Below the pieces are notes generated by a model. The model was not told where the DNA came from and did no database searches. It saw only the letters and a list, made by a program, of their open reading frames with translations. Both the position numbers and the translations under genes were made by a program. DNA of 62,978 nt, filler included, from Octopus bimaculoides (taxonomy: Eukaryota): assembly GCF_001194135.2 (NCBI RefSeq). It is 10 parts of 8 records of this genome, joined end to end, with 100 filler letters (N's around TTAATTAATTAA, not from the genome) between each part and the next. Parts side by side here need not be neighbours in the genome. Positions count along the whole stretch, not along the records: positions 29,693 to 37,715 come from NC_068985.1; 9 more parts are not named here. One strand, given 5' to 3'. Of the stretch, positions 29,593 to 37,715 are shown one piece after another. Each line of letters begins with the position of its first letter. The stretch's first letter is position 1.

Positions 29593-29934
29593 NNNNNNNN
29601 NNNNNNNNNNNNNNNNNNNNNNNNNNNNNNNNNNNNTTAATTAATTAANNNNNNNNNNNNNNNNNNNNNNNNNNNNNNNNNNNNNNNNNNNNATATATAT
29701 ATATATAAATATTAATATTTCTAAATCTCTCTAAAGGAGACTATAGCAGCAGTACTGGATATTAATAGTTATCGCCAAGCTAAAATGGCAGTCCAGGAAA
29801 TAGGATGAATGCTGCCATTGATTAGCTCCAAGAGGCCATCACCTCTAGCTAGCTATGTGACACACAAACCTGTGTCCATTACAACCTTTGAACCAGCAAG
29901 AGGAGGCCAGCAGCTTCCTCTTGCTGGTTCAACA

Positions 29935-29977
29935 TCCACAGACTAGGTTCGGGGTATTTTCCCCTTTTCAATGTGGA
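29935..29977 (-). ncRNA. Type I hammerhead ribozyme, U3-A8 core variant (A15.1 changed to C in this copy)
   Basis: UCCACA-UUGAAAA-GGGG-AAAAUA-CCCC-GAAC-CUAG-UC-UGUGGA: 6-bp helix I and 4-bp GC helix II. Confidence 0.8.
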
Positions 29978-30484
29978 GTAGCCGAACCAAGCAGGCGTCA
30001 CTGCTGACCGTCTGTTCGAAGGTTTATTTACCTAAATTCAGTGGAATACATGCACTGGTTTTCAAAAATAGAAGTATTAATATTTCTAAATCTCCCTAAA
30101 GGAGACTACGGCAGCAGTACTGGATATTAATAGTTATCGCCAAGCTAACATGGCAGTCCAAGATGAATGCTGCCATTGATTAGCTCCAAGAGGCTATCGC
30201 CTCTAGCTAACTATGTAACACACAAACCTGTGTCCATTACAACCTTCAAACAGGGGAGGTCAGCAGCTGGTTCAACATCCACAGACTAGTTTCAGGGTAT
30301 TTTCCTGAACTGCTATGTTAGCTTGGTGATAACTATTAATATCCAGTACTGCTGTCATAGTCTGCTTTAGAGAGATTTAGAAATATTAATACTTCTATTT
30401 TTGAAAACTAGTGGATGTATTCCACTGAATATAGGTAAATAAACCTTCGGACAGTCAGCAGTGACGCCTGCTGGGTTCGGCTGC

Positions 30485-30527
30485 TCCACATTGAAATGGG
30501 GAAAATACCTCGAAACTAGTCTGTGGA
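30485..30527 (+). ncRNA. Type I hammerhead ribozyme, U3-A8 core variant (A9 changed to U in this copy)
   Basis: UCCACA-UUGAAAU-GGGG-AAAAUA-CCUC-GAAA-CUAG-UC-UGUGGA. Helix I extends via GGUUCGGC (30474-81) pairing with GUUGAACC (30529-36). Helix III is the palindrome ACUAGU. Confidence 0.8.
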
Positions 30528-30987
30528 TGTTGAACCAGCAAGGGGAAGCTGCTGACCTCCCCTGTTCAAAGAGACTGTAATGGACACAGGTTTGTGTGTC
30601 ACATAGCTAACTATAGGCGATGGCCTCTTGGAGCTAATTAACGGCAGCATTCACTCTATTTTCCTGGACTGCCATGTTAGCTTGGCGATATANNNNNNNN
30701 NNNNNNNNNNNNNNNNNNNNNNNNNNNNNNNNNNNNNNNNNNNNNNNNNNNNNNNNNNNNNNNNNNNNNNNNNNNNNNNNNNNNNNNNNNNNNNNNNNNN
30801 NNNNNNNNNNNNNNNNNNNNNNNNNNNNNNNNNNNNNNNNNNNNNNNNNNNNNNNNNNNNNNNNNNNNNNNNNNNNNNNNNNNNNNNNNNNNNNNNNNNN
30901 NNNNNNNNNNNNNNNNNNNNNNNNNNNNNNNNNNNNNNNNNNNNNNNNNNNNNNNNNNNNNNNNNNNNNNNNNNNNNNNNNNNNNNN

Positions 30988-31022
<35 letters not shown>

Positions 31023-31480
31023 CACAGATACAATGCTAAGCTTGGTTAATTTACTAAATTGATAAGAGTAATTAAAATTATCAGTTAATAGGAAGATAAA
31101 GGGGGAATATATTAAGATTTAAGTGATGCTATGATATTAAGGGAAAACAGAAAATAGAAAAAATTGTACTTAAATGAGCTTCCATAGATGGATACAGATA
31201 GAAGAAGGGAGAAATAGTAGACACAGAGGAATGTAAGTAAACATAATAAAAATACTTGATAAATTATGAAGCAATGTTTAGAATAAGTAAAGATAAACTA
31301 GAAGATAATTAATGAATGAGACTATTATTATATGTACCATGATACAAATAATGATAGTTATTATTCTGTAACTGTATTTCCCTCACTCAGAGATTTAAAA
31401 CATGTTTTTCTTGATGCAAGATCAGTGACTGTGTGTCGCTTAAAGAATATATAGTATTTGCTAGTGGAGATAGCTTTTGT

Positions 31481-31682
31481 CACTAGCTGGTGGCTGTCTC
31501 ACACTGAGGATGGATAACATTCAGAAACCTAGGTCTGTGAGTATCACGTAAGGCTAGAAATGGGAGCGATGATCTCCCTTACAAATGGTATATATGGACA
31601 CAAACTGTGTGTCGATAGCCAGTTGGAAAAGATATTTTCCTGGGGCTAAAACAATCGTCCTTCATAGGACTGCCACGTTACA
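31481..31682 (+). mobile_element. HHR-bearing dispersed repeat (family E), a diverged relative of the 365-bp unit
   Basis: Same order and similar spacing of HHR, GGGAG/CTCCC stem, ATGGACACA..TGTGTGTC hairpin, GGRGCTAA and GGACTGCCAYGTTA as in 30485-30679. Confidence 0.8.
31498..31541 (+). ncRNA. Type I hammerhead ribozyme with intact core
   Basis: CUCACA-CUGAGGA-UGGAU-AAC-AUUCA-GAAA-CCUAGG-UC-UGUGAG: 6-bp helix I, 5-bp helix II, palindromic helix III ACCUAGGU, GUC site at 31533-31535. Confidence 0.88.
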
Positions 31683-31913
31683 TTCACTAATGTTACTATA
31701 TTTCTCACGGCGGTGCATCAGCATGGCCGCAGCTCTAAGCTGAAACTATAAANNNNNNNNNNNNNNNNNNNNNNNNNNNNNNNNNNNNNNNNNNNNNNNN
31801 NNNNNNNNNNNNNNNNNNNNNNNNNNNNNNNNNNNNNNNNNNNNNNNNNNNNAATTCATTAGTACACAACTTACAAAAATTATTACCTATACGATAAGAT
31901 TTCGCCTTACAAA

Positions 31914-33641
31914 CTATCTCTGAATGTAAATGTACTTAATATTTTTAGATTTTAGTTCCCAAATATATTTACTAAGGCCAGTAGAATTAATCAAATTTCT
32001 ATTCTTAAAGGAATGCATGTGTTGAGCGACACGTAATTTAATTTTATTCGAAGTCAATCCTATGTAAAGCTTATTTAAATTATAACCATTAAATTTATTC
32101 CCGTCCATTAAAGTCACTATACATTTATACACGACATCCTTCAAATTACATTTATTATTAAATTTACATTTAGTCTTATCTCTACATGTACAATTAATTA
32201 TATCCTGATCCTTATTATTGTTATTAGAATAAGTATTTAATTTATATTTGTAATACCTATTTAACTTAAATCTATTAAAAGAAGAAATGATGTTACCAAC
32301 ATTATTAGTAGTAGAATAACCTACACCCAAATTATTACTAGAAAAGATATAATATTTTTTATCATCTCTAAGGAATATATCAATTACATTCAAAATCTCT
32401 TTAATAATGTTAGTTTTAACTTGAACGCCGTAAGGAATGATTAGCCAAAGTTTGTTCTTATTATAGATATTATTATATTTATTATTTATATTATTAAATT
32501 TATTATTATCATTAAATGAATAAAATTTAATCTTATTAGTTTGTCCATTACAATTATGTTTATGTTTATGTGTTTTATTATCATTATACCTATTATTCTT
32601 ATCATAATTACCTAAATAGACCTTATAATTCTCAATGTTATGTTTATTAAATGGATCATTAATATTATAATCATTAATATTATAATTATATTTCGGATTA
32701 TTAAAGAATTGAATATCATTAGCATATCCTGCCTCGCGGAGGGCTCTATTGTAATAAGGTGCATGTTTTTCGAAGATTTCTAAATTGGATGAAAGTAATG
32801 ATATTCTCTTAACTATAGTATATGTTAACGATTTCTTAATTGAGGGTGGGTGATTACTTTTATCATAAATATATTTAATATTTTCATTAATCTTATGGTA
32901 AGGTTGGGTTTTACCTGTTGATAAGTTAAAATTAGCATCTAAATAATTTATATTATAGTTCTCATTATATATAGTAATCTTTAATCCATTTCTTTTTTTA
33001 AAAAAACTATATAGTTTCTTATATAATTCTAGTGTTCTATTGGTGCAATTCTTAGTTAGTAATAAGAGGTCATCCCTATATAAACCACCCTCCAATTTTA
33101 AGTTTTCAAGTTGAAGTTCTGATAATAAATATATACCTACTAAATTAGATACCTGTGCTGAATCGGGTGCCCCCTGTGGTATATCAAAATGGTCCCTAGT
33201 ATCTTTCCTAGCCGACAATTTATTATTATATTTAATCAACGATTTCCTAGCCATTTTAACTACATTAACTTCATCATAAATCATACCTACCTTCTTCATT
33301 GCATAAATTAGGGCCTTATTAAGTACAATCTCATTAATAGAAGAATAATAATTATCAATATCTATTTGAATAAATTTATATCTATTTTTATCTTTAATAT
33401 TATTAAACCATTTTAAAGTATCTATAGTACTATTCCATAATTTAAGGTAATTAATATCATTTAATCTATTGATATATTTACCTAAAATGATCTTACTTAA
33501 GTTACCTAGATCTGGCTTACAAGGACAAATATGCCTAACTTTAGGGTCAGCATAAAAATTATCCTTATGGTCTTTCAAAGTAATCCTAGGGTGCATAGGT
33601 ACATAAAGTTCAGTCTTATTAGCTAACTCATATTTCATCAT
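31914..33641 (-). CDS. PLE reverse transcriptase / GIY-YIG endonuclease, 575-aa open stretch of a disrupted ORF
   Basis: RT motifs IQIDIDNYYSSI, PQGAPDS and GLYRDDLL; Cys linker CTCRDKTKC...C; VVYKC...LYIGLTS...RVAQH...NSTGLSKYIWELK. Confidence 0.9.
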   Translation of the reverse strand: MMKYELANKTELYVPMHPRITLKDHKDNFYADPKVRHICPCKPDLGNLSKIILGKYINRLNDINYLKLWNSTIDTLKWFNNIKDKNRYKFIQIDIDNYYSSINEIVLNKALIYAMKKVGMIYDEVNVVKMARKSLIKYNNKLSARKDTRDHFDIPQGAPDSAQVSNLVGIYLLSELQLENLKLEGGLYRDDLLLLTKNCTNRTLELYKKLYSFFKKRNGLKITIYNENYNINYLDANFNLSTGKTQPYHKINENIKYIYDKSNHPPSIKKSLTYTIVKRISLLSSNLEIFEKHAPYYNRALREAGYANDIQFFNNPKYNYNINDYNINDPFNKHNIENYKVYLGNYDKNNRYNDNKTHKHKHNCNGQTNKIKFYSFNDNNKFNNINNKYNNIYNKNKLWLIIPYGVQVKTNIIKEILNVIDIFLRDDKKYYIFSSNNLGVGYSTTNNVGNIISSFNRFKLNRYYKYKLNTYSNNNNKDQDIINCTCRDKTKCKFNNKCNLKDVVYKCIVTLMDGNKFNGYNLNKLYIGLTSNKIKLRVAQHMHSFKNRNLINSTGLSKYIWELKSKNIKYIYIQR

Positions 33642-34155
33642 TATTAATTTAGAGGCCTTATTTATAGAATATAGAGTATTTTCCAGAACAATTTATGAAA
33701 TTTAATATTCTTCACCACCTTCCAAATATTATCCTCTAAAATCTGTAAATTCCTATTATACGGGGGTTCTTTTCTAGATTTAAATTCTGAATTAATATAA
33801 TTGGAATTATCTACATCGTTATTATTAGAAATATTATAATTATTATAGTAGACTTTCCATTTAATTCTAGTAATAAAATCCTTAATATTATTAATAAGTT
33901 TCAAAATATATTCATTTCTAGACGGAATGGGGATATCATTCAAAGATGAATTCCAAAACAGCGGCTCTATCCTACCTGTAAATTCTATAACTAACGAAAA
34001 CTGAAAGTTATAAATTGAAATAAAATAATTATGATGATAATATTAGGGATATTATTATTATTATTATTGTATTTTAACCCGAAGATTAGCTATATTTTTG
34101 AATAGAATTGATTTTCGATCGATTTATTTTAATCGATTTTATTTTATTTGATTTT

Positions 34156-34191
34156 CTATTTGAAAATGTAGTTATGAAACACGTGTAGTCG
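34156..34191 (+). ncRNA. Degenerate minimal HHR (U3-A8 type), antisense to PLE1
   Basis: CUAU-UUGAAAA-U-GUAGUUAU-GAAA-CACGUG-UA-GUCG: palindromic helix III, weak helices I and II. Confidence 0.45.
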
Positions 34192-34437
34192 TTTTACTAT
34201 TTTAATAATTATTATTTTGTATTTTATTATAGTTCTTTTTAGTGTATTTACTTATTAAATTTTTCTATGTGTGACTATGGATTTTCATGGATGAGTTCAG
34301 GAATTGTGGTTCTTTTTTCTAAATTATATATCTATATATTATATACTGTGAAACTTAATTCAATTTTAATTTTGATAAATTAAATTAAATTGAGTTTTAC
34401 CTATAAATTTGGATTTTTATCCCTAATATTATTATTA

Positions 34438-34474
<37 letters not shown>

Positions 34475-36089
34475 NNNNNNNNNNNNNNNNNNNNNNNNNN
34501 NNNNNNNNNNNNNNNNNNNNNNNNNNNNNNNNNNNNNNNNNNNNNNNNNNNNNNNNNNNNNNNNNNNNNNNNNNNNNNNNNNNNNNNNNNNNNNNNNNNN
34601 NNNNNNNNNNNNNNNNNNNNNNNNNNNNNNNNNNNNNNNNNNNNNNNNNNNNNNNNNNNNNNNNNNNNNNNNNNNNNNNNNNNNNNNNNNNNNNNNNNNN
34701 NNNNNNNNNNNNNNNNNNNNNNNNNNNNNNNNNNNNNNNNNNNNNNNNNNNNNNNNNNNNNNNNNNNNNNNNNNNNNNNNNNNNNNNNNNNNNNNNNNNN
34801 NNNNNNNNNNNNNNNNNNNNNNNNNNNNNNNNNNNNNNNNNNNNNNNNNNNNNNNNNNNNNNNNNNNNNNNNNNNNNNNNNNNNNNNNNNNNNNNNNNNN
34901 NNNNNNNNNNNNNNNNNNNNNNNNNNNNNNNNNNNNNNNNNNNNNNNNNNNNNNNNNNNNNNNNNNNNNNNNNNNNNNNNNNNNNNNNNNNNNNNNNNNN
35001 NNNNNNNNNNNNNNNNNNNNNNNNNNNNNNNNNNNNNNNNNNNNNNNNNNNNNNNNNNNNNNNNNNNNNNNNNNNNNNNNNNNNNNNNNNNNNNNNNNNN
35101 NNNNNNNNNNNNNNNNNNNNNNNNNNNNNNNNNNNNNNNNNNNNNNNNNNNNNNNNNNNNNNNNNNNNNNNNNNNNNNNNNNNNNNNNNATATATATATA
35201 TATACATTATATCTATGGCTGGGAAGACCCATATATAGAGATGGAGCGGATGGACCAGAGCCATACAGACCCCCCAAAACCAATATCAAGTACAGAAAAT
35301 GATCGCACATGCACTAGGATCTAGTATAAGAGTTATCCTAAAAGATCCCACATTTAAGTTTAACAACAAAATGTACACCCAGGATGAGGGGGCGGCCATC
35401 GGTATTAGCATTGCCAGTGATGTGGTCAACCTTTTCATGAGATGGTGAGACAGAAGGCTTAAAGAACGCCTGACACAGAACTCCATGCTCATGAACATGT
35501 ACTCTCGCTAACTCGATGATATCAACATAGTGGTAAAGGCACCCCCTCAAGAGACTACCCTAGAAATAGAAACAGAAACTAATACTATGGAGAGCATCCA
35601 GCAAATAGCTAACTCCATCCACCAGAGTATTAAGGTCATGATAGACTACCCTACGAAACACCCTAGCCATAGACTGCCAGTACTAGATACAGAACTCTGG
35701 CTGGAAACTGTGAATAATAAAACCTAAATCCTCCATTCACACTATGCCTCCAAATACCTGATCCATCTGATATTAGCTATCGCGGATAATGCCAAATTCA
35801 ATATATTGATGGCAGACCTCATCAGAGTAATGAGAAATGTGTCCCGCATGTGCAACCCTACAGAGTTAAAAGAACACATACAACACTTCATTTGCCGCAT
35901 AGAGAAAGGATCAGAGTATATAAAGGAGCCATTAGGAAATTTGAAACTATTATATGTAACGGTAGGAATAGGATTTGCCCACTCTATTGGAGAAAGTCAT
36001 GGAACGTCACTGACAGGAGTAAGAAGAAAATAGGGAAGGTCAGCTCATGGTATGATAGCCTCTAGGAGTGGTATACAAATACCAGTGTC

Positions 36090-36674
36090 ATGTTCATCGA
36101 CACCACCCCTAGAGGCGAACTGGCGTACCACTTTAGAAGGGCCCTAGACAAGCTTAAGCAAAGAATTAAGGTTGTAGAAAGGCCAGGTAACCCTATCAAA
36201 TCCCAAATCGGTAGAACCTACCCTTTTAGTAGAACCCCCTGTACTGACAGGAACTGTATTGTATGTAGATTTAGCCCACAAACAAACTGTAAAGCTAGGA
36301 ATGTAGTCTATAGTATAAGATGTACAGAGGGACGGTGCAGAAACAAGATGACGTATATAGTAGAGATAGCATGGAGCATAGGAGAGTGGATAAATGAGCA
36401 TTGGAGGGAACTTAAGGAAGAGAAGAGCTCATCGGTTCTATACCAGCATGCCGAGAGGGAACACGGGGGCTCACTCAACAACATAGAAGTTAAAATCTTG
36501 TCCACACATAGAACAGACACAACGCTTAGACAAATTACGGAAGCTACACACATAATAAAAGATAAACCTAGCCTAAATAGAAAACTAGAATGGAACACCA
36601 GCACACTCCGCGCACACAAACATGTACCACAACCTATGACAGAATATGATCCCCATAAACTAATAATAATATGA
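36090..36674 (+). pseudogene. GIY-YIG endonuclease region of PLE 2
   Basis: PCTDRNCIVC...CKARNVVYSIRC...C...YIVEIAWSIGEWINEH...LYQHAEREH...RQITEA...PSLNRKLEW. Confidence 0.88.
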
Positions 36675-36998
36675 AACTAATACAATACACAGATAAATAA
36701 ATGGAATCAAATAATTATATATATAAACAAAATAAAATAAATTAAATTAATAAAAAAACGAAAGAAATGAAAAAAGTAAGTAGATAAAAAAGATGAATAA
36801 AATAAATAAAAGTAAAATGAGCGTGAATAAACAGGGGATACTGATAATGCAGGTACCATACATATTCCCACACACACACTTACTAAACATAGACACATAC
36901 AGGGATATACGCATGTGCAATTAAAATACATACAACAGGAATACAAAATGGCAGATCGTTAGTAAGGAGCGACACAAAAAACGAAAGAAGAAAGCAAA

Positions 36999-37044
36999 GG
37001 ACCACTGATGAGGTTACAGAAGTGTGACGAAAGAACTCTGGCTG
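36999..37044 (+). ncRNA. Minimal hammerhead ribozyme motif in the PLE 2 3' region
   Basis: CCA-CUGAUGA-G-GUUACA-GAAG-UGUGAC-GAAA-GAAC-UC-UGG: intact core, 6-bp helix II, short helices I and III. Confidence 0.7.
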
Positions 37045-37254
37045 AAATACAATTAATATAAAATAAAGCTGAAGCAGGTGAACACCAAATATTTAGTGTG
37101 TGTGTTTTCTTTGGCTAAACTGGCAACATGACCATCCCCAAATACAACAATATCTGTTTCAACACATGAACTCACATCAAGAATCAGGCAAAACGAATAT
37201 ATAAACGTATATATGTATGTATATATATGTGTGTGTGTGTGTGCATGTATGTAC

Positions 37255-37288
<34 letters not shown>

Positions 37289-37431
37289 ATGTATATATAC
37301 ATATATATTTGTATATGTATATATGTATATACATATATATGTGTATATGTATATATATATGTATATATATATGTATATATATATATGTATGTGTGTGTGT
37401 GTGTGTGTGTGTATACATATATATATATATG

Positions 37432-37715
37432 TAACAGGACAAAAATCCCTTTCTTGAGAGACCTTGTTGCTTGCAATCAATCCTTATGCTTACGGAAACA
37501 CACCTGAAACCAGATATAGGAAATGCAGAAATACACATACCACAGTATGTTGTATTACGGACTGACAGAAAAGAAAGGAGTCATGGTGGAGTTGCTATGT
37601 ACATCTGCAAAGACCTCACACCCCAGGTCCTTTCTGTCACACTCAAATTCAGTATGTGACACACTAATTGTACATATAAGACAACTCAATGTAGTTATAT
37701 GTGCTACATATCGCC
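37432..37715 (+). pseudogene. APE endonuclease fragment of a CR1/L2-group LINE
   Basis: [42 protein letters not shown].../SNSVCDTLIVHIRQLNVVICATYR; cut by a gap. Confidence 0.88.

What the first reader, a model, noticed from the sequence alone, without database searches (positions are those of the whole stretch)
29710..30691. Hammerhead-ribozyme tandem array: a candidate cephalopod retrozyme
Seen: a non-coding ~365-bp unit repeated about 2.7 times between (TA)n tracts. Each unit holds a type I HHR; the consensus of the three copies is UCCACA-UUGAAAA-GGGG-AAAAUA-CCCC-GAAA-CUAG-UC-UGUGGA. Helix I extends by about 12 more pairs across a small internal loop. Cleavage-to-cleavage distance between units 2 and 1 is 343 nt (30283 to 29941, minus strand). 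Known: 170-400-nt HHR tandem repeats (newt satellite 2, Schistosoma Sm-alpha, metazoan non-LTR retrozymes) are cut to monomers, can circularise, and are thought to use PLE machinery. Inference: this is such a family, and PLEs lie 1.2 kb away. I do not know whether it has been described in octopus.
Basis: partly seen in the sequence, partly recalled or inferred. Interest (0 to 1): 0.92.

Follow-up and report, generated by a model that had tools for sequence, protein, structure and literature searches.

The report
Decayed hammerhead-ribozyme repeat insertion (retrozyme-like)
A roughly 980-bp non-coding insertion in a (TA)n microsatellite consists of 345-365-bp repeats that each carry a hammerhead self-cleaving ribozyme motif, a known kind of parasitic animal repeat (retrozyme), here old, mutated and arranged head-to-head, not as a simple tandem.

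Summary
There are 1.65 head-to-tail units with the HHR on the minus strand (29705/12-30305). A further 1.09 units are inverted, with the HHR on the plus strand (30298-30690). The two arms meet 5'-end to 5'-end at an 8-nt microhomology. (TA)n flanks both sides.

Only two HHRs are complete. Each has one lesion at a conserved core position (C15.1 in A, U9 in C), and both carry U3-A8 in place of C3-G8. The third is a 3' half.

Rfam finds nothing, but it also misses a fully canonical type I HHR that I found at 31498-31541 (+). That HHR sits in a roughly 60%-identical relative of the unit. Compared with it, the array shows five compensatory pair changes, including C3-G8 to U3-A8.

The 343-nt monomer folds far better than shuffles (z = -7), and helix I extends into a long stem. 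Degenerate Penelope-like element (PLE) ORFs lie in the same piece.

Verdict: a decayed member of the metazoan non-LTR retrozyme / PLE-associated HHR repeat class, with a PLE-style insertion architecture. This is a new member of a known kind. Copy number, expression, cleavage and host species could not be tested.

The parts
29693..29711 (.). Left flanking (TA)n microsatellite. It merges with the AU-rich 3' end of the left arm, so the boundary can only be placed within about 29705-29712.
   Evidence: Unit A departs from units B and C left of '...aatattaatatttc' and continues as (TA)n.
29712..30067 (-). Unit A. It is complete and HHR-sense on the minus strand. Its sense 3' end, ...GAAAUAUUAAUA, abuts (TA)n.
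   Evidence: (families D1, D2).
29935..29977 (-). HHR copy A: UCCACA-UUGAAAA-GGGGAAAAUACCCC-GAA-C-CUAG-U-C / UGUGGA. It has the U3-A8 core and C at 15.1, which is a core lesion. C17 is the complement of 29941, and cleavage would fall between 29941 and 29940.
30068..30305 (-). Unit B, 5'-truncated in the sense orientation inside HHR loop II. It carries 10-, 5- and 8-nt deletions relative to A.
30278..30305 (-). HHR copy B, 3' half only: loop II, CCCU, GAAA, CUAG, UC, UGUGGA. C17 is the complement of 30284.
30298..30305 (.). Head-to-head inversion junction. The 8-nt microhomology TATTTTCC is shared by HHR loop II of the left arm and an internal site of the right arm.
   Evidence: D5, I3, I6. 30291-30331 matches 30650-30690 at a spacing of 359.
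30298..30656 (+). Unit C, in inverted orientation and HHR-sense on the plus strand.
   Evidence: (I1-I6).
30485..30527 (+). HHR copy C: UCCACA-UUGAAAU-GGGGAAAAUACCUC-GAA-A-CUAG-U-C / UGUGGA. It has the U3-A8 core and U at position 9, which is a core lesion. C17 is 30521.
30657..30690 (+). Start of unit D. The right arm ends at ...GGCGAUA, followed by 'ta', the N gap and (TA)n.
   Evidence: D5, I7, I8.
30693..31016 (.). Assembly gap of 295 N (30693-30987) followed by (TA)n (30988-31016). It probably stands for unresolved (TA)n on the right flank of the insertion.
31331..31700 (+). Element X, a diverged relative of the unit. About 61% of 171 aligned columns downstream of the HHR are identical. 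The part upstream of the HHR is not significantly similar. It is cut on the right by the gap at 31753.
   Evidence: z = 13 and 10 against dinucleotide shuffles; reverse-strand controls at background.
31498..31541 (+). Fully canonical type I HHR inside X: CUCACA-CUGAGGA-UGGAUAACAUUCA-GAAA-CCUAGG-UC / UGUGAG. C17 is 31535.
   Evidence: Rfam does not detect it.
31914..33943 (-). PLE copy 1, degenerate, with 18-28% G+C. A 575-aa ORF carries RT motifs, a CxxC linker and a GIY-YIG-like C-terminus, plus an Asn-rich insert, and its C-terminus is truncated. A 93-aa upstream ORF fragment is also present. The stretch 31017-34441, which also holds element X and a 100-N gap, is bounded by (TA)n at 30988-31016 and 34442-34474.
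35530..36674 (+). PLE copy 2, a fragment with about 41% G+C. Broken ORFs end in a 194-aa CxxC + GIY-YIG-like segment. Its 5' part is lost in the gap at 34475-35189.

Best explanation
This is an old, now-mutated insertion of a non-coding, hammerhead-bearing repeat of about 345-365 nt. It belongs to the metazoan non-LTR retrozyme class, that is, non-autonomous repeats related to the terminal repeats of Penelope-like elements (PLEs).

Inferred life cycle of the family, by analogy with described retrozymes:
1. A tandem array is transcribed.
2. Neighbouring HHRs pair through their palindromic helix III (ACUAGU with ACUAGU) into a double hammerhead and cut after GUC. This releases 343-365-nt monomers.
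3. The monomers fold into a long, largely base-paired structure that continues helix I.
4. A host RNA ligase circularises them.
5. A PLE reverse transcriptase/GIY-YIG endonuclease copies the circular or multimeric RNA into a nicked (TA)n target.

What the sequence of this locus shows directly:
- Both arms are longer than one unit.
- Each arm ends on its 3' side at a different AU-rich internal position of the unit, not at the cleavage site, directly against (TA)n.
- The two 5'-truncated ends meet head-to-head at an 8-nt microhomology.

This geometry is expected if both nicked target strands primed reverse transcription on a template with no fixed end (twin priming). It is also the arrangement described for PLE insertions.

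Since insertion the units have diverged by 8-15%. Each surviving HHR has acquired a change at a conserved core position (A15.1 to C, A9 to U), so the locus itself is probably catalytically dead. U3-A8 in place of C3-G8 is shared by both complete copies. It was therefore present in the source RNA as a compensated core pair.
For: HHR motif:
- Two complete copies and one half copy have helix I of 6 bp, helix II of 4 bp with a 6-nt loop AAAAUA, GAA(A), a CUAG palindrome and GUC.
- Chance expectation is 0.013 hits per piece.
- A canonical HHR at 31498-31541 lies in a collinear relative of the unit.
- Between the two, 5 of 15 pairs show compensatory double changes: two in helix I, the core 3-8 pair, and two in helix II. 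97.7% of cells are paired, against 0-1 compensatory pairs when partners are slid.
- The U3-A8 covariation is documented in natural PLE hammerheads (PMC4209133).
- Loop II differs by one base from the CAAAUA loop of the HHR sequence printed in PMC6412130, which I recall as Schistosoma-derived.

Structure:
- The 343-nt monomer has a minimum free energy of -125.9 kcal/mol and z = -7.1. Helix I with a long extension and helix II appear in the minimum-energy folds of two independent monomers.
- The dimer fold forms the intermolecular helix III.

Class features:
- Unit of 343-365 bp, G+C 0.41-0.43, no ORF above 45 aa. This matches the described 150-450-bp, low-GC repeats, including 350-390 bp in mussel (PMC7229834).

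Insertion architecture:
-, together with PLE features in PMC8557442: (TA)n targets, inverted 5'-truncated copies and partial tandems.
- Opposite-strand HHR pairs 100-700 bp apart are noted in PMC4209133.

PLE ORFs in the piece.
Against: - No Rfam hammerhead hit, even at E<=10. This is weakened by the same miss for the canonical HHR.
- No genomic copy of the array has an intact core.
- There are only two independent lineages (array and X), and the HHR alignment was made by hand to fit the structure. The covariation count therefore leans towards the structure.
- No covariation is seen among the array units over the rest of the fold.
- No other copy of the unit could be retrieved. Multi-copy status, transcription, cleavage and circles are therefore untested.
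- The unit has no detectable similarity to either PLE in the piece.
- The right end of the insertion abuts an assembly gap.
Confidence: 0.7

Rival explanations
1. It is a DNA-level minisatellite derived from a PLE terminal repeat. A single 5'-truncated PLE end or pLTR carrying an HHR was duplicated by unequal crossing-over or replication slippage and later partly inverted. It never existed as an independent RNA-mobilised retrozyme.
For: - The 2026 preprint (10.64898/2026.07.22.740005) proposes local amplification of PLE termini into tandem repeats.
- The units differ by indels typical of array evolution.
- Only one locus is available.
- X may be such a solitary PLE-derived copy.
Against: - The two arms end at different internal unit positions, each directly against (TA)n.
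- Their 5' ends join at a microhomology. This is the signature of primed cDNA synthesis, not of unequal exchange.
- The unit shares nothing with the two PLEs present.
Confidence: 0.17
2. The head-to-head arrangement is an assembly artefact. The real locus would be a plain head-to-tail array, or two separate arrays, mis-joined in a short-read scaffold that is full of gaps and microsatellites.
For: - There are three N gaps in 8 kb, one of them directly at the right end of the array.
- PMC8557442 notes that PLE tandem and inverted insertions cause problems in short-read assemblies.
Against: - The junction shares only 8 nt, far shorter than the overlaps assemblers need for a false join.
- The arms differ by 8-18%, so they are distinct sequences and not one collapsed copy.
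- Inverted 5'-truncated copies are a described feature of PLE insertions.
Confidence: 0.1
3. It is an ordinary satellite repeat with a chance hammerhead-like string and no ribozyme ancestry.
For: - Non-canonical core (U3, A8), with one further core mismatch in each copy.
- No Rfam hit.
Against: - Chance expectation is 0.013 per piece, against 3 hits observed.
- A homologous element has a perfect core and compensatory changes.
- The helix sizes, the loop II sequence and the palindromic helix III are those of canonical metazoan HHRs.
Confidence: 0.03

Closest known systems
Metazoan non-LTR retrozymes, especially the 350-390-bp Mytilus galloprovincialis repeats (Cervera & de la Pena 2020, PMC7229834)
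   Same: - Non-coding head-to-tail units of a few hundred bp (343-365 here).
- G+C below 45%.
- One type I HHR per unit.
- Highly base-paired monomer fold.
- Mollusc precedent for the unit size.
- Co-occurrence with PLEs.
   Different: - Only 1.65 + 1.09 units, arranged head-to-head.
- U3-A8 core.
- Every copy here carries a core lesion.
- Expression, circles and copy number are unknown.
- The host species is not verified.
Amphibian satellite 2 / axolotl retrozymes (HHR_Amex1, 330-350-bp repeats; PMC7229834)
   Same: - In the monomer, helix III is a single A-U pair capped by a palindromic tetraloop (CUAG). Efficient cleavage is therefore expected only as a double hammerhead between tandem copies, and the dimer fold forms a 6-bp intermolecular helix III.
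- Similar unit length.
   Different: - Different sequence family and different core pair (U3-A8).
- Conservation of the loop I / loop II tertiary contacts was not established here.
PLE hammerheads (min-HHRs) in pLTRs, including the Schistosoma Cercyon U3-A8 variant (Cervera & de la Pena 2014, PMC4209133)
   Same: - Association with PLEs.
- U3-A8 covariation of the core.
- Palindromic 15.2-16.2 / loop 3.
- Occurrence of paired motifs on opposite strands a few hundred bp apart.
   Different: - Min-HHRs have a long helix II (7-8 bp), a short helix I (4-5 bp), a bulged base between position 9 and 10.1, and no helix III.
- The array motif has the canonical 6-bp / 4-bp architecture with no bulge.
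- The unit repeats directly, with no PLE ORF between copies.
PLE insertion architecture (Craig et al. 2021, PMC8557442) and L1 twin-priming inversions (from my own knowledge: Ostertag & Kazazian 2001)
   Same: - (TA)n target.
- More-than-unit-length copies.
- Inverted 5'-truncated copy joined head-to-head.
- Microhomology at the junction.
   Different: Here the inserted sequence is a roughly 360-nt non-coding repeat, not a 3-4-kb element. No 30-40-bp 'tail' was identified.

Membership tests
Hammerhead ribozyme, type I | Conserved core C3-U4-G5-A6-N7-G8-A9 ... G12-A13-A14, A15.1-U16.1, H17 | tested here: inconclusive
   - Both complete copies have U3/A8, a compensated pair known in natural PLE HHRs (PMC4209133).
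- Copy A has C15.1 and copy C has U9.
- The inferred source sequence fits the core with U3-A8.
- The relative X fits the canonical core perfectly.
Hammerhead ribozyme, type I | Three helices around the core, with helix I open-ended | tested here: met
   - Helix I is 6 bp plus a long extension.
- Helix II is 4 bp plus a 6-nt loop.
- Helix III is 1 bp plus the palindromic tetraloop CUAG, which becomes 6 bp in the dimer.
-.
Hammerhead ribozyme, type I | Helices supported by compensatory changes among relatives | tested here: met
   Array against X: 5 of 15 pairs changed on both sides and kept, 97.7% of cells paired, slid controls 0-1. Caveats: two lineages only, and a hand-made alignment.
Hammerhead ribozyme, type I | Match to the Rfam covariance models (Hammerhead_1, HH9, HH10 and others) | tested here: not met
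   No hit at gathering score or at E<=10. The models also miss the canonical HHR at 31498-31541, so the test is insensitive to this short-helix-III architecture.
Hammerhead ribozyme, type I | Self-cleavage after H17 | not testable with these tools
   Needs in vitro transcription of monomer and dimer.
Metazoan non-LTR retrozyme | Head-to-tail tandem repeats of about 150-450 bp, each with a type I HHR | tested here: inconclusive
   Head-to-tail continuity exists within each arm (A to B spacing 343-365; C to D spacing 359). However, there are only 1.65 and 1.09 units, in opposite orientation, with 2.5 HHRs.
Metazoan non-LTR retrozyme | Non-coding, low G+C (<45-50%), no LTR/PBS/PPT | tested here: met
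   - G+C 0.41-0.43.
- Longest ORF 45 aa.
- No protein relatives for any frame.
- No terminal repeats other than the unit itself.
- PBS and PPT were not specifically searched.
Metazoan non-LTR retrozyme | Multi-copy family dispersed in the genome | not testable with these tools
   No eukaryotic genome collection is available. Exact-word scans of metagenome, viral and prokaryote collections found nothing. One diverged relative (X) lies in the piece.
Metazoan non-LTR retrozyme | Expressed as monomer-length linear and circular RNA | not testable with these tools
   Only indirect evidence: the monomer fold has z = -7.1.
Metazoan non-LTR retrozyme | Co-occurrence with PLEs in the same genome | tested here: met
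   Two degenerate ORFs in the piece show PLE domain order: RT motifs, CxxC linker and GIY-YIG-like C-terminus. Pfam and PDB sequence searches did not name them.
PLE minimal hammerhead (min-HHR) | Helix II of 7-8 bp, helix I of 4-5 bp, unpaired base between 9 and 10.1, no helix III, located in a pLTR flanking a PLE ORF | tested here: not met
   The array motif has 6-bp and 4-bp helices, no bulge and a palindromic loop 3. Units follow each other directly without an ORF.

The most novel reading that the evidence does not exclude
The family may be a still-active retrozyme of a lineage (possibly cephalopods) where none has been described. Its hammerhead would combine the canonical, tertiary-stabilised type I architecture with a U3-A8 catalytic pair. 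Its insertions (more than unit length, variable AU-rich end points, head-to-head arms in (TA)n) would give the first sequence-level footprint of PLE-type twin-primed, rolling-circle reverse transcription of a circular ribozyme RNA.
Probability: 0.15. Interest if true: 0.6.

Novelty: new member of a known kind. Interest (0 to 1): 0.35.

Why it matters
Hammerhead-bearing tandem repeats (retrozymes) are thought to spread through small circular RNAs using PLE enzymes. The integration step has so far only been inferred from phylogenetic co-occurrence and from sequence similarity to PLE terminal repeats.

This locus adds a structural clue. The insertion has two arms longer than one unit and no fixed 3' end. 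It shows (TA)n targeting and a microhomology-joined head-to-head junction, which is the pattern described for PLE insertions.

It also shows the U3-A8 core covariation, previously reported for minimal PLE hammerheads, inside an HHR of canonical architecture.

If the host is a cephalopod, the known host range of the class would grow. By itself, one decayed locus changes no general picture.

Tried and rejected
- Rfam at gathering score on the whole piece, and at E<=10 on the array: no hammerhead. The same search misses the canonical HHR at 31498, so I did not count this negative against the motif.
- Six-frame peptide query of units A+B against 5.8 billion proteins, hoping to reach other copies through spurious ORFs: no hits.
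- Exact-word scans with two conserved 21- and 27-mers: nothing in JGI metagenomes, IMG/VR or prokaryote genomes.
- Exact look-up of the 575-aa ORF to recover the source contig and organism: not on record.
- The 194-aa ORF gave one 79%-identical Logan hit. Its best contig is 72% identical at the DNA level, has no HHR and has no usable organism label.
- Pfam and PDB sequence searches did not name the PLE ORFs. Identification rests on the alignment with about 700-aa animal RT proteins.
- RNAalifold on the three monomers: no covariation over the whole fold. This is expected if the differences arose after insertion.
- Looked for the unit in the PLE flanks of the piece and for HHRs next to PLE 1, PLE 2, L001 and L002: none.
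- Tested whether X is itself a tandem: no significant internal repeat.
- Looked for the missing C-terminus of PLE 1 beyond the stop: not found.
- One paper search failed because a term was too short.
- A paper search combining 'hammerhead ribozyme' with cephalopod terms listed no paper that holds both among its top results.
Full report
**1. What is in the sequence**

The piece runs from 29693 to 37715 and holds three assembly gaps: 30693-30987, 31753-31852 and 34475-35189. Between a (TA)n tract at 29693-29706 and the first gap lies a repeat with start-to-start spacings of 343-365 bp.

It is not a plain tandem.
- Units A (about 29712-30067) and B (30068-30305) follow each other head to tail.
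- From 30298 onward the sequence is the reverse complement of the same unit: unit C (30298-30656) and the first 34 nt of unit D (30657-30690). This shows as inverted repeats I1-I8 at 91-97% complementarity and in BLAST.
- Units are 82-91% identical. B carries deletions of 10, 5 and 8 nt.

The last bases before the gap read ggcgata-ta, where the unit would continue ggcgata-ac. (TA)n resumes right after the gap at 30988-31016. The insertion therefore most likely ends at about 30690, and the gap most likely stands for unresolved (TA)n. Total length is about 980 bp.

**2. The hammerhead motif**

In the sense orientation, copy A (minus strand, 29977 to 29935) reads UCCACA-UUGAAAA-GGGGAAAAUACCCC-GAA-C-CUAG-U-C/UGUGGA. 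Copy C (plus strand, 30485-30527) reads UCCACA-UUGAAAU-GGGGAAAAUACCUC-GAA-A-CUAG-U-C/UGUGGA. Copy B keeps only the 3' half, from loop II onward, because the inversion junction cuts it.

Relative to the canonical core:
- Both complete copies have U3 and A8 in place of C3 and G8.
- Copy A has C at 15.1.
- Copy C has U at position 9.

Position 9 is a tie between the array copies.

I wrote a descriptor requiring helix I of at least 5 bp, helix II of at least 4 bp, a C3-G8 or U3-A8 core, at most one core mismatch, and a 15.2-16.2 pair. It finds exactly three sites in the 8-kb piece: A, C and a third at 31498-31541. First-order Markov shuffles give 0.013 sites per piece.

**3. Rfam**

No hammerhead family is reported at gathering score, or at E<=10 when only the 1-kb array is searched.

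The third site is a textbook type I HHR: CUCACA-CUGAGGA-UGGAUAACAUUCA-GAAA-CCUAGG-UC/UGUGAG. Rfam misses it too at E<=10. The Rfam negative therefore says little about hammerheads with this very short helix III.

**4. A diverged relative supplies the comparative evidence**

The canonical HHR lies in a stretch I call X (about 31331-31700, plus strand). X aligns collinearly with the unit in sense orientation.
- Whole-region local score is 68-72, against 29 +/- 4 for shuffles (maximum 55) and 27-28 for the reverse strand.
- With the HHR itself excluded, the roughly 170 nt downstream of the cleavage site are 61% identical (z = 13 against copy A, z = 10 against copy C).
- The upstream part is not significantly similar.

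I made a hand-registered alignment of the HHR from A, C, X and the B half and counted pairs on it.
- 97.7% of cells form standard pairs.
- 5 of 15 pairs are changed on both sides and kept: C-G/U-A and U-A/C-G in helix I, C3-G8/U3-A8 in the core, and two in helix II.
- Structures slid by 1-3 columns give 0-1.

Helix III stays palindromic through a symmetric length change (CCUAGG against CUAG).

Caveats: there are only two independent lineages, the alignment was fitted by me, and the helix II columns are the least certain.

Outside the HHR, the hairpin just 3' of the cleavage site is kept in A, C and X. Between A and C it shows one A-U to G-C compensatory change (read directly from the sequences).

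**5. Fit to what is known of metazoan hammerheads**

Cervera & de la Pena (PMC4209133) describe canonical metazoan type I HHRs as follows: helix I of 6 bp, helix II of 4 bp, and helix III of 1-2 bp capped by a small palindromic loop. These work as dimers in tandem repeats. That is the architecture found here.

The same paper reports a natural U3-A8 covariation in PLE hammerheads of Schistosoma, with about 1,300 hits. It also reports pairs of motifs 100-700 bp apart on opposite strands. Here HHR A and HHR C are 580 bp apart on opposite strands.

Loop II (AAAAUA) differs by one base from the CAAAUA loop of the HHR sequence printed in PMC6412130. That this sequence is Schistosoma-derived is my own recollection. 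I did not establish the tertiary loop-loop contacts.

In a single molecule, ViennaRNA forms helices I and II but not III. Two molecules form the intermolecular helix III: -52.2 against 2 x -23.3 kcal/mol for the consensus, and -39.8 against 2 x -13.6 kcal/mol for X. This is consistent with a double-hammerhead mode, as in amphibian repeats (PMC7229834).

**6. The unit as an RNA**

The 343-nt monomer has a minimum free energy of -125.9 kcal/mol (shuffles -88.3 +/- 5.3, z = -7.1). The complementary strand gives z = -5.9.

Two independent monomers were folded: the B/A composite and the circularly permuted C unit. In both, the minimum-energy structure contains helix I, continued across a 3x1 internal loop into a stem of more than 20 further pairs, and helix II. 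The circular folds are the same.

Over the rest of the fold, the three array units show no covariation. That is expected if their differences arose after insertion.

**7. Insertion architecture (shown), and what it suggests (inferred)**

Shown:
- In sense orientation, the left arm reads from a 5' end inside HHR loop II (30305) through 1.65 units. It ends at ...GAAAUAUUAAUA, directly against (TA)n (about 29705-29712).
- The right arm reads from an internal position (30298) through 1.09 units. It ends at ...GGCGAUA, against 'ta', the gap and (TA)n.
- The two 5' ends overlap in the 8-nt microhomology TATTTTCC (30298-30305).
- Both arms exceed one unit. The two 3' ends lie at different AU-rich places of the unit, and neither lies at the cleavage site.

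Inferred: a template without a fixed 3' end (multimeric or circular RNA) was primed by (TA)n 3' ends on both nicked strands. The two cDNAs were then joined by microhomology.

Craig et al. (PMC8557442) list (TA)n targets, partial tandems and an adjacent inverted 5'-truncated copy as typical of PLE insertions.

An 8-nt overlap is too short to explain an assembler mis-join. Even so, the junction and the right flank need long-read confirmation.

**8. PLEs in the piece**

The 575-aa minus-strand ORF (31914-33641) has 581 relatives at E<=1e-3. The best hits are about 700-aa proteins, some found in corals and a jellyfish. One is named 'Reverse transcriptase domain-containing protein'.

The alignment shows RT motifs (FDI..FYPSI, MGS.DGAE, LYRDDGL, NFLD, SNHPP). 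A CNCR..C...C linker follows, then a VIY...YIGLTE...H..SF segment of GIY-YIG type. This is the domain order of canonical EN+ PLEs.

This copy has 18-28% G+C, carries an Asn-rich insert and lacks the last roughly 70 residues. The stretch 31017-34441, which also holds X and a 100-N gap, is bounded by (TA)n at 30988-31016 and 34442-34474.

A second, broken PLE on the plus strand ends in a 194-aa ORF (36090-36674) that aligns to the same linker + EN region.

Neither PLE shares sequence with the unit. No HHR was found beside them.

**9. Age and activity**

Pairwise divergence of 8-18% among units, together with independent core lesions in A and C, indicates an old insertion that has decayed neutrally. 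HHR-region differences between A and C are 4 in about 62 nt, similar to the unit average.

U3 and A8 are shared by A and C, so they were in the source RNA.

From established mutational knowledge of the hammerhead core, changes at A9 and A15.1 reduce activity strongly. Self-cleavage of transcripts from this locus is therefore unlikely. The claim concerns the family, not this copy.

**10. Comparison and novelty**

The closest described systems are:
- metazoan non-LTR retrozymes, with 350-390-bp units in mussel (PMC7229834);
- amphibian satellite-2-type repeats, which share the helix III type and the dimer requirement;
- PLE hammerheads, which share U3-A8 and the PLE context (PMC4209133).

A 2026 preprint argues that retrozymes are non-autonomous PLE derivatives, using distribution and pLTR similarity in vertebrates. 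It notes that invertebrates were not examined for that relationship (10.64898/2026.07.22.740005).

Literature searches turned up no description of an HHR repeat in a cephalopod. I could not verify that the host is a cephalopod.

The finding is a new member of a known kind. Two modestly interesting details are a U3-A8 core in a canonical-architecture HHR and a PLE-style head-to-head insertion of more than unit length.

**11. What remains open**

Still untested:
- copy number;
- conservation across copies;
- transcription, cleavage and circularisation;
- the true structure across the gap;
- the host species.

None of these could be addressed. No eukaryotic genome or transcriptome collection was searchable by DNA, and indirect routes failed.

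Noticed in passing
Rfam misses it even at E<=10. It lies in a diverged relative of the array unit.
   Followed up: yes
31914-33943 (-), with bounding (TA)n at 30988-31016 and 34442-34474: Degenerate PLE copy with unusually low G+C (18-28%). It has an Asn-rich insert of about 70 residues between the RT/thumb region and the endonuclease, and a truncated C-terminus. Its closest relatives (30-43% identity) include cnidarian proteins.
   Followed up: partly
35530-36674 (+) and downstream 36785-36908: Second PLE fragment (about 41% G+C) with broken frames. A 1.46-kb Logan contig (L002, run SRR11869391) is 72-77% identical at the DNA level, so related copies exist in another sequenced sample of unknown organism.
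   Followed up: partly
29888-29932 (unit A); homologous sites 30530-30571 (unit C) and about 31552-31575 (X): The hairpin immediately 3' of the cleavage site is kept in all relatives. It is a 20-bp near-perfect stem in A. Between A and C one pair changed A-U to G-C on both sides. B lost the 5' arm by a 10-nt deletion.
   Followed up: partly
31017-31330 (+): A purine-rich, AT-rich stretch of about 310 bp lies between (TA)n and element X. It has no similarity to anything else in the piece, and its origin is unknown.
   Followed up: no
37471-37715 (+): An ORF fragment (LTETHLKPD...VLRTDRKERSHGGVAMY) resembles, from memory, the N-terminus of an AP-type endonuclease of a non-LTR (LINE) retrotransposon. 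It runs into the edge of the piece. Pfam gave no hit for the 62-aa piece.
   Followed up: no
36693-36810 and 37207-37430: An A-rich low-complexity tract, and a compound (GTAT/AT)n microsatellite of about 220 bp. Together with the (TA)n tracts they mark this region as a microsatellite-rich landing zone for retroelements.
   Followed up: no
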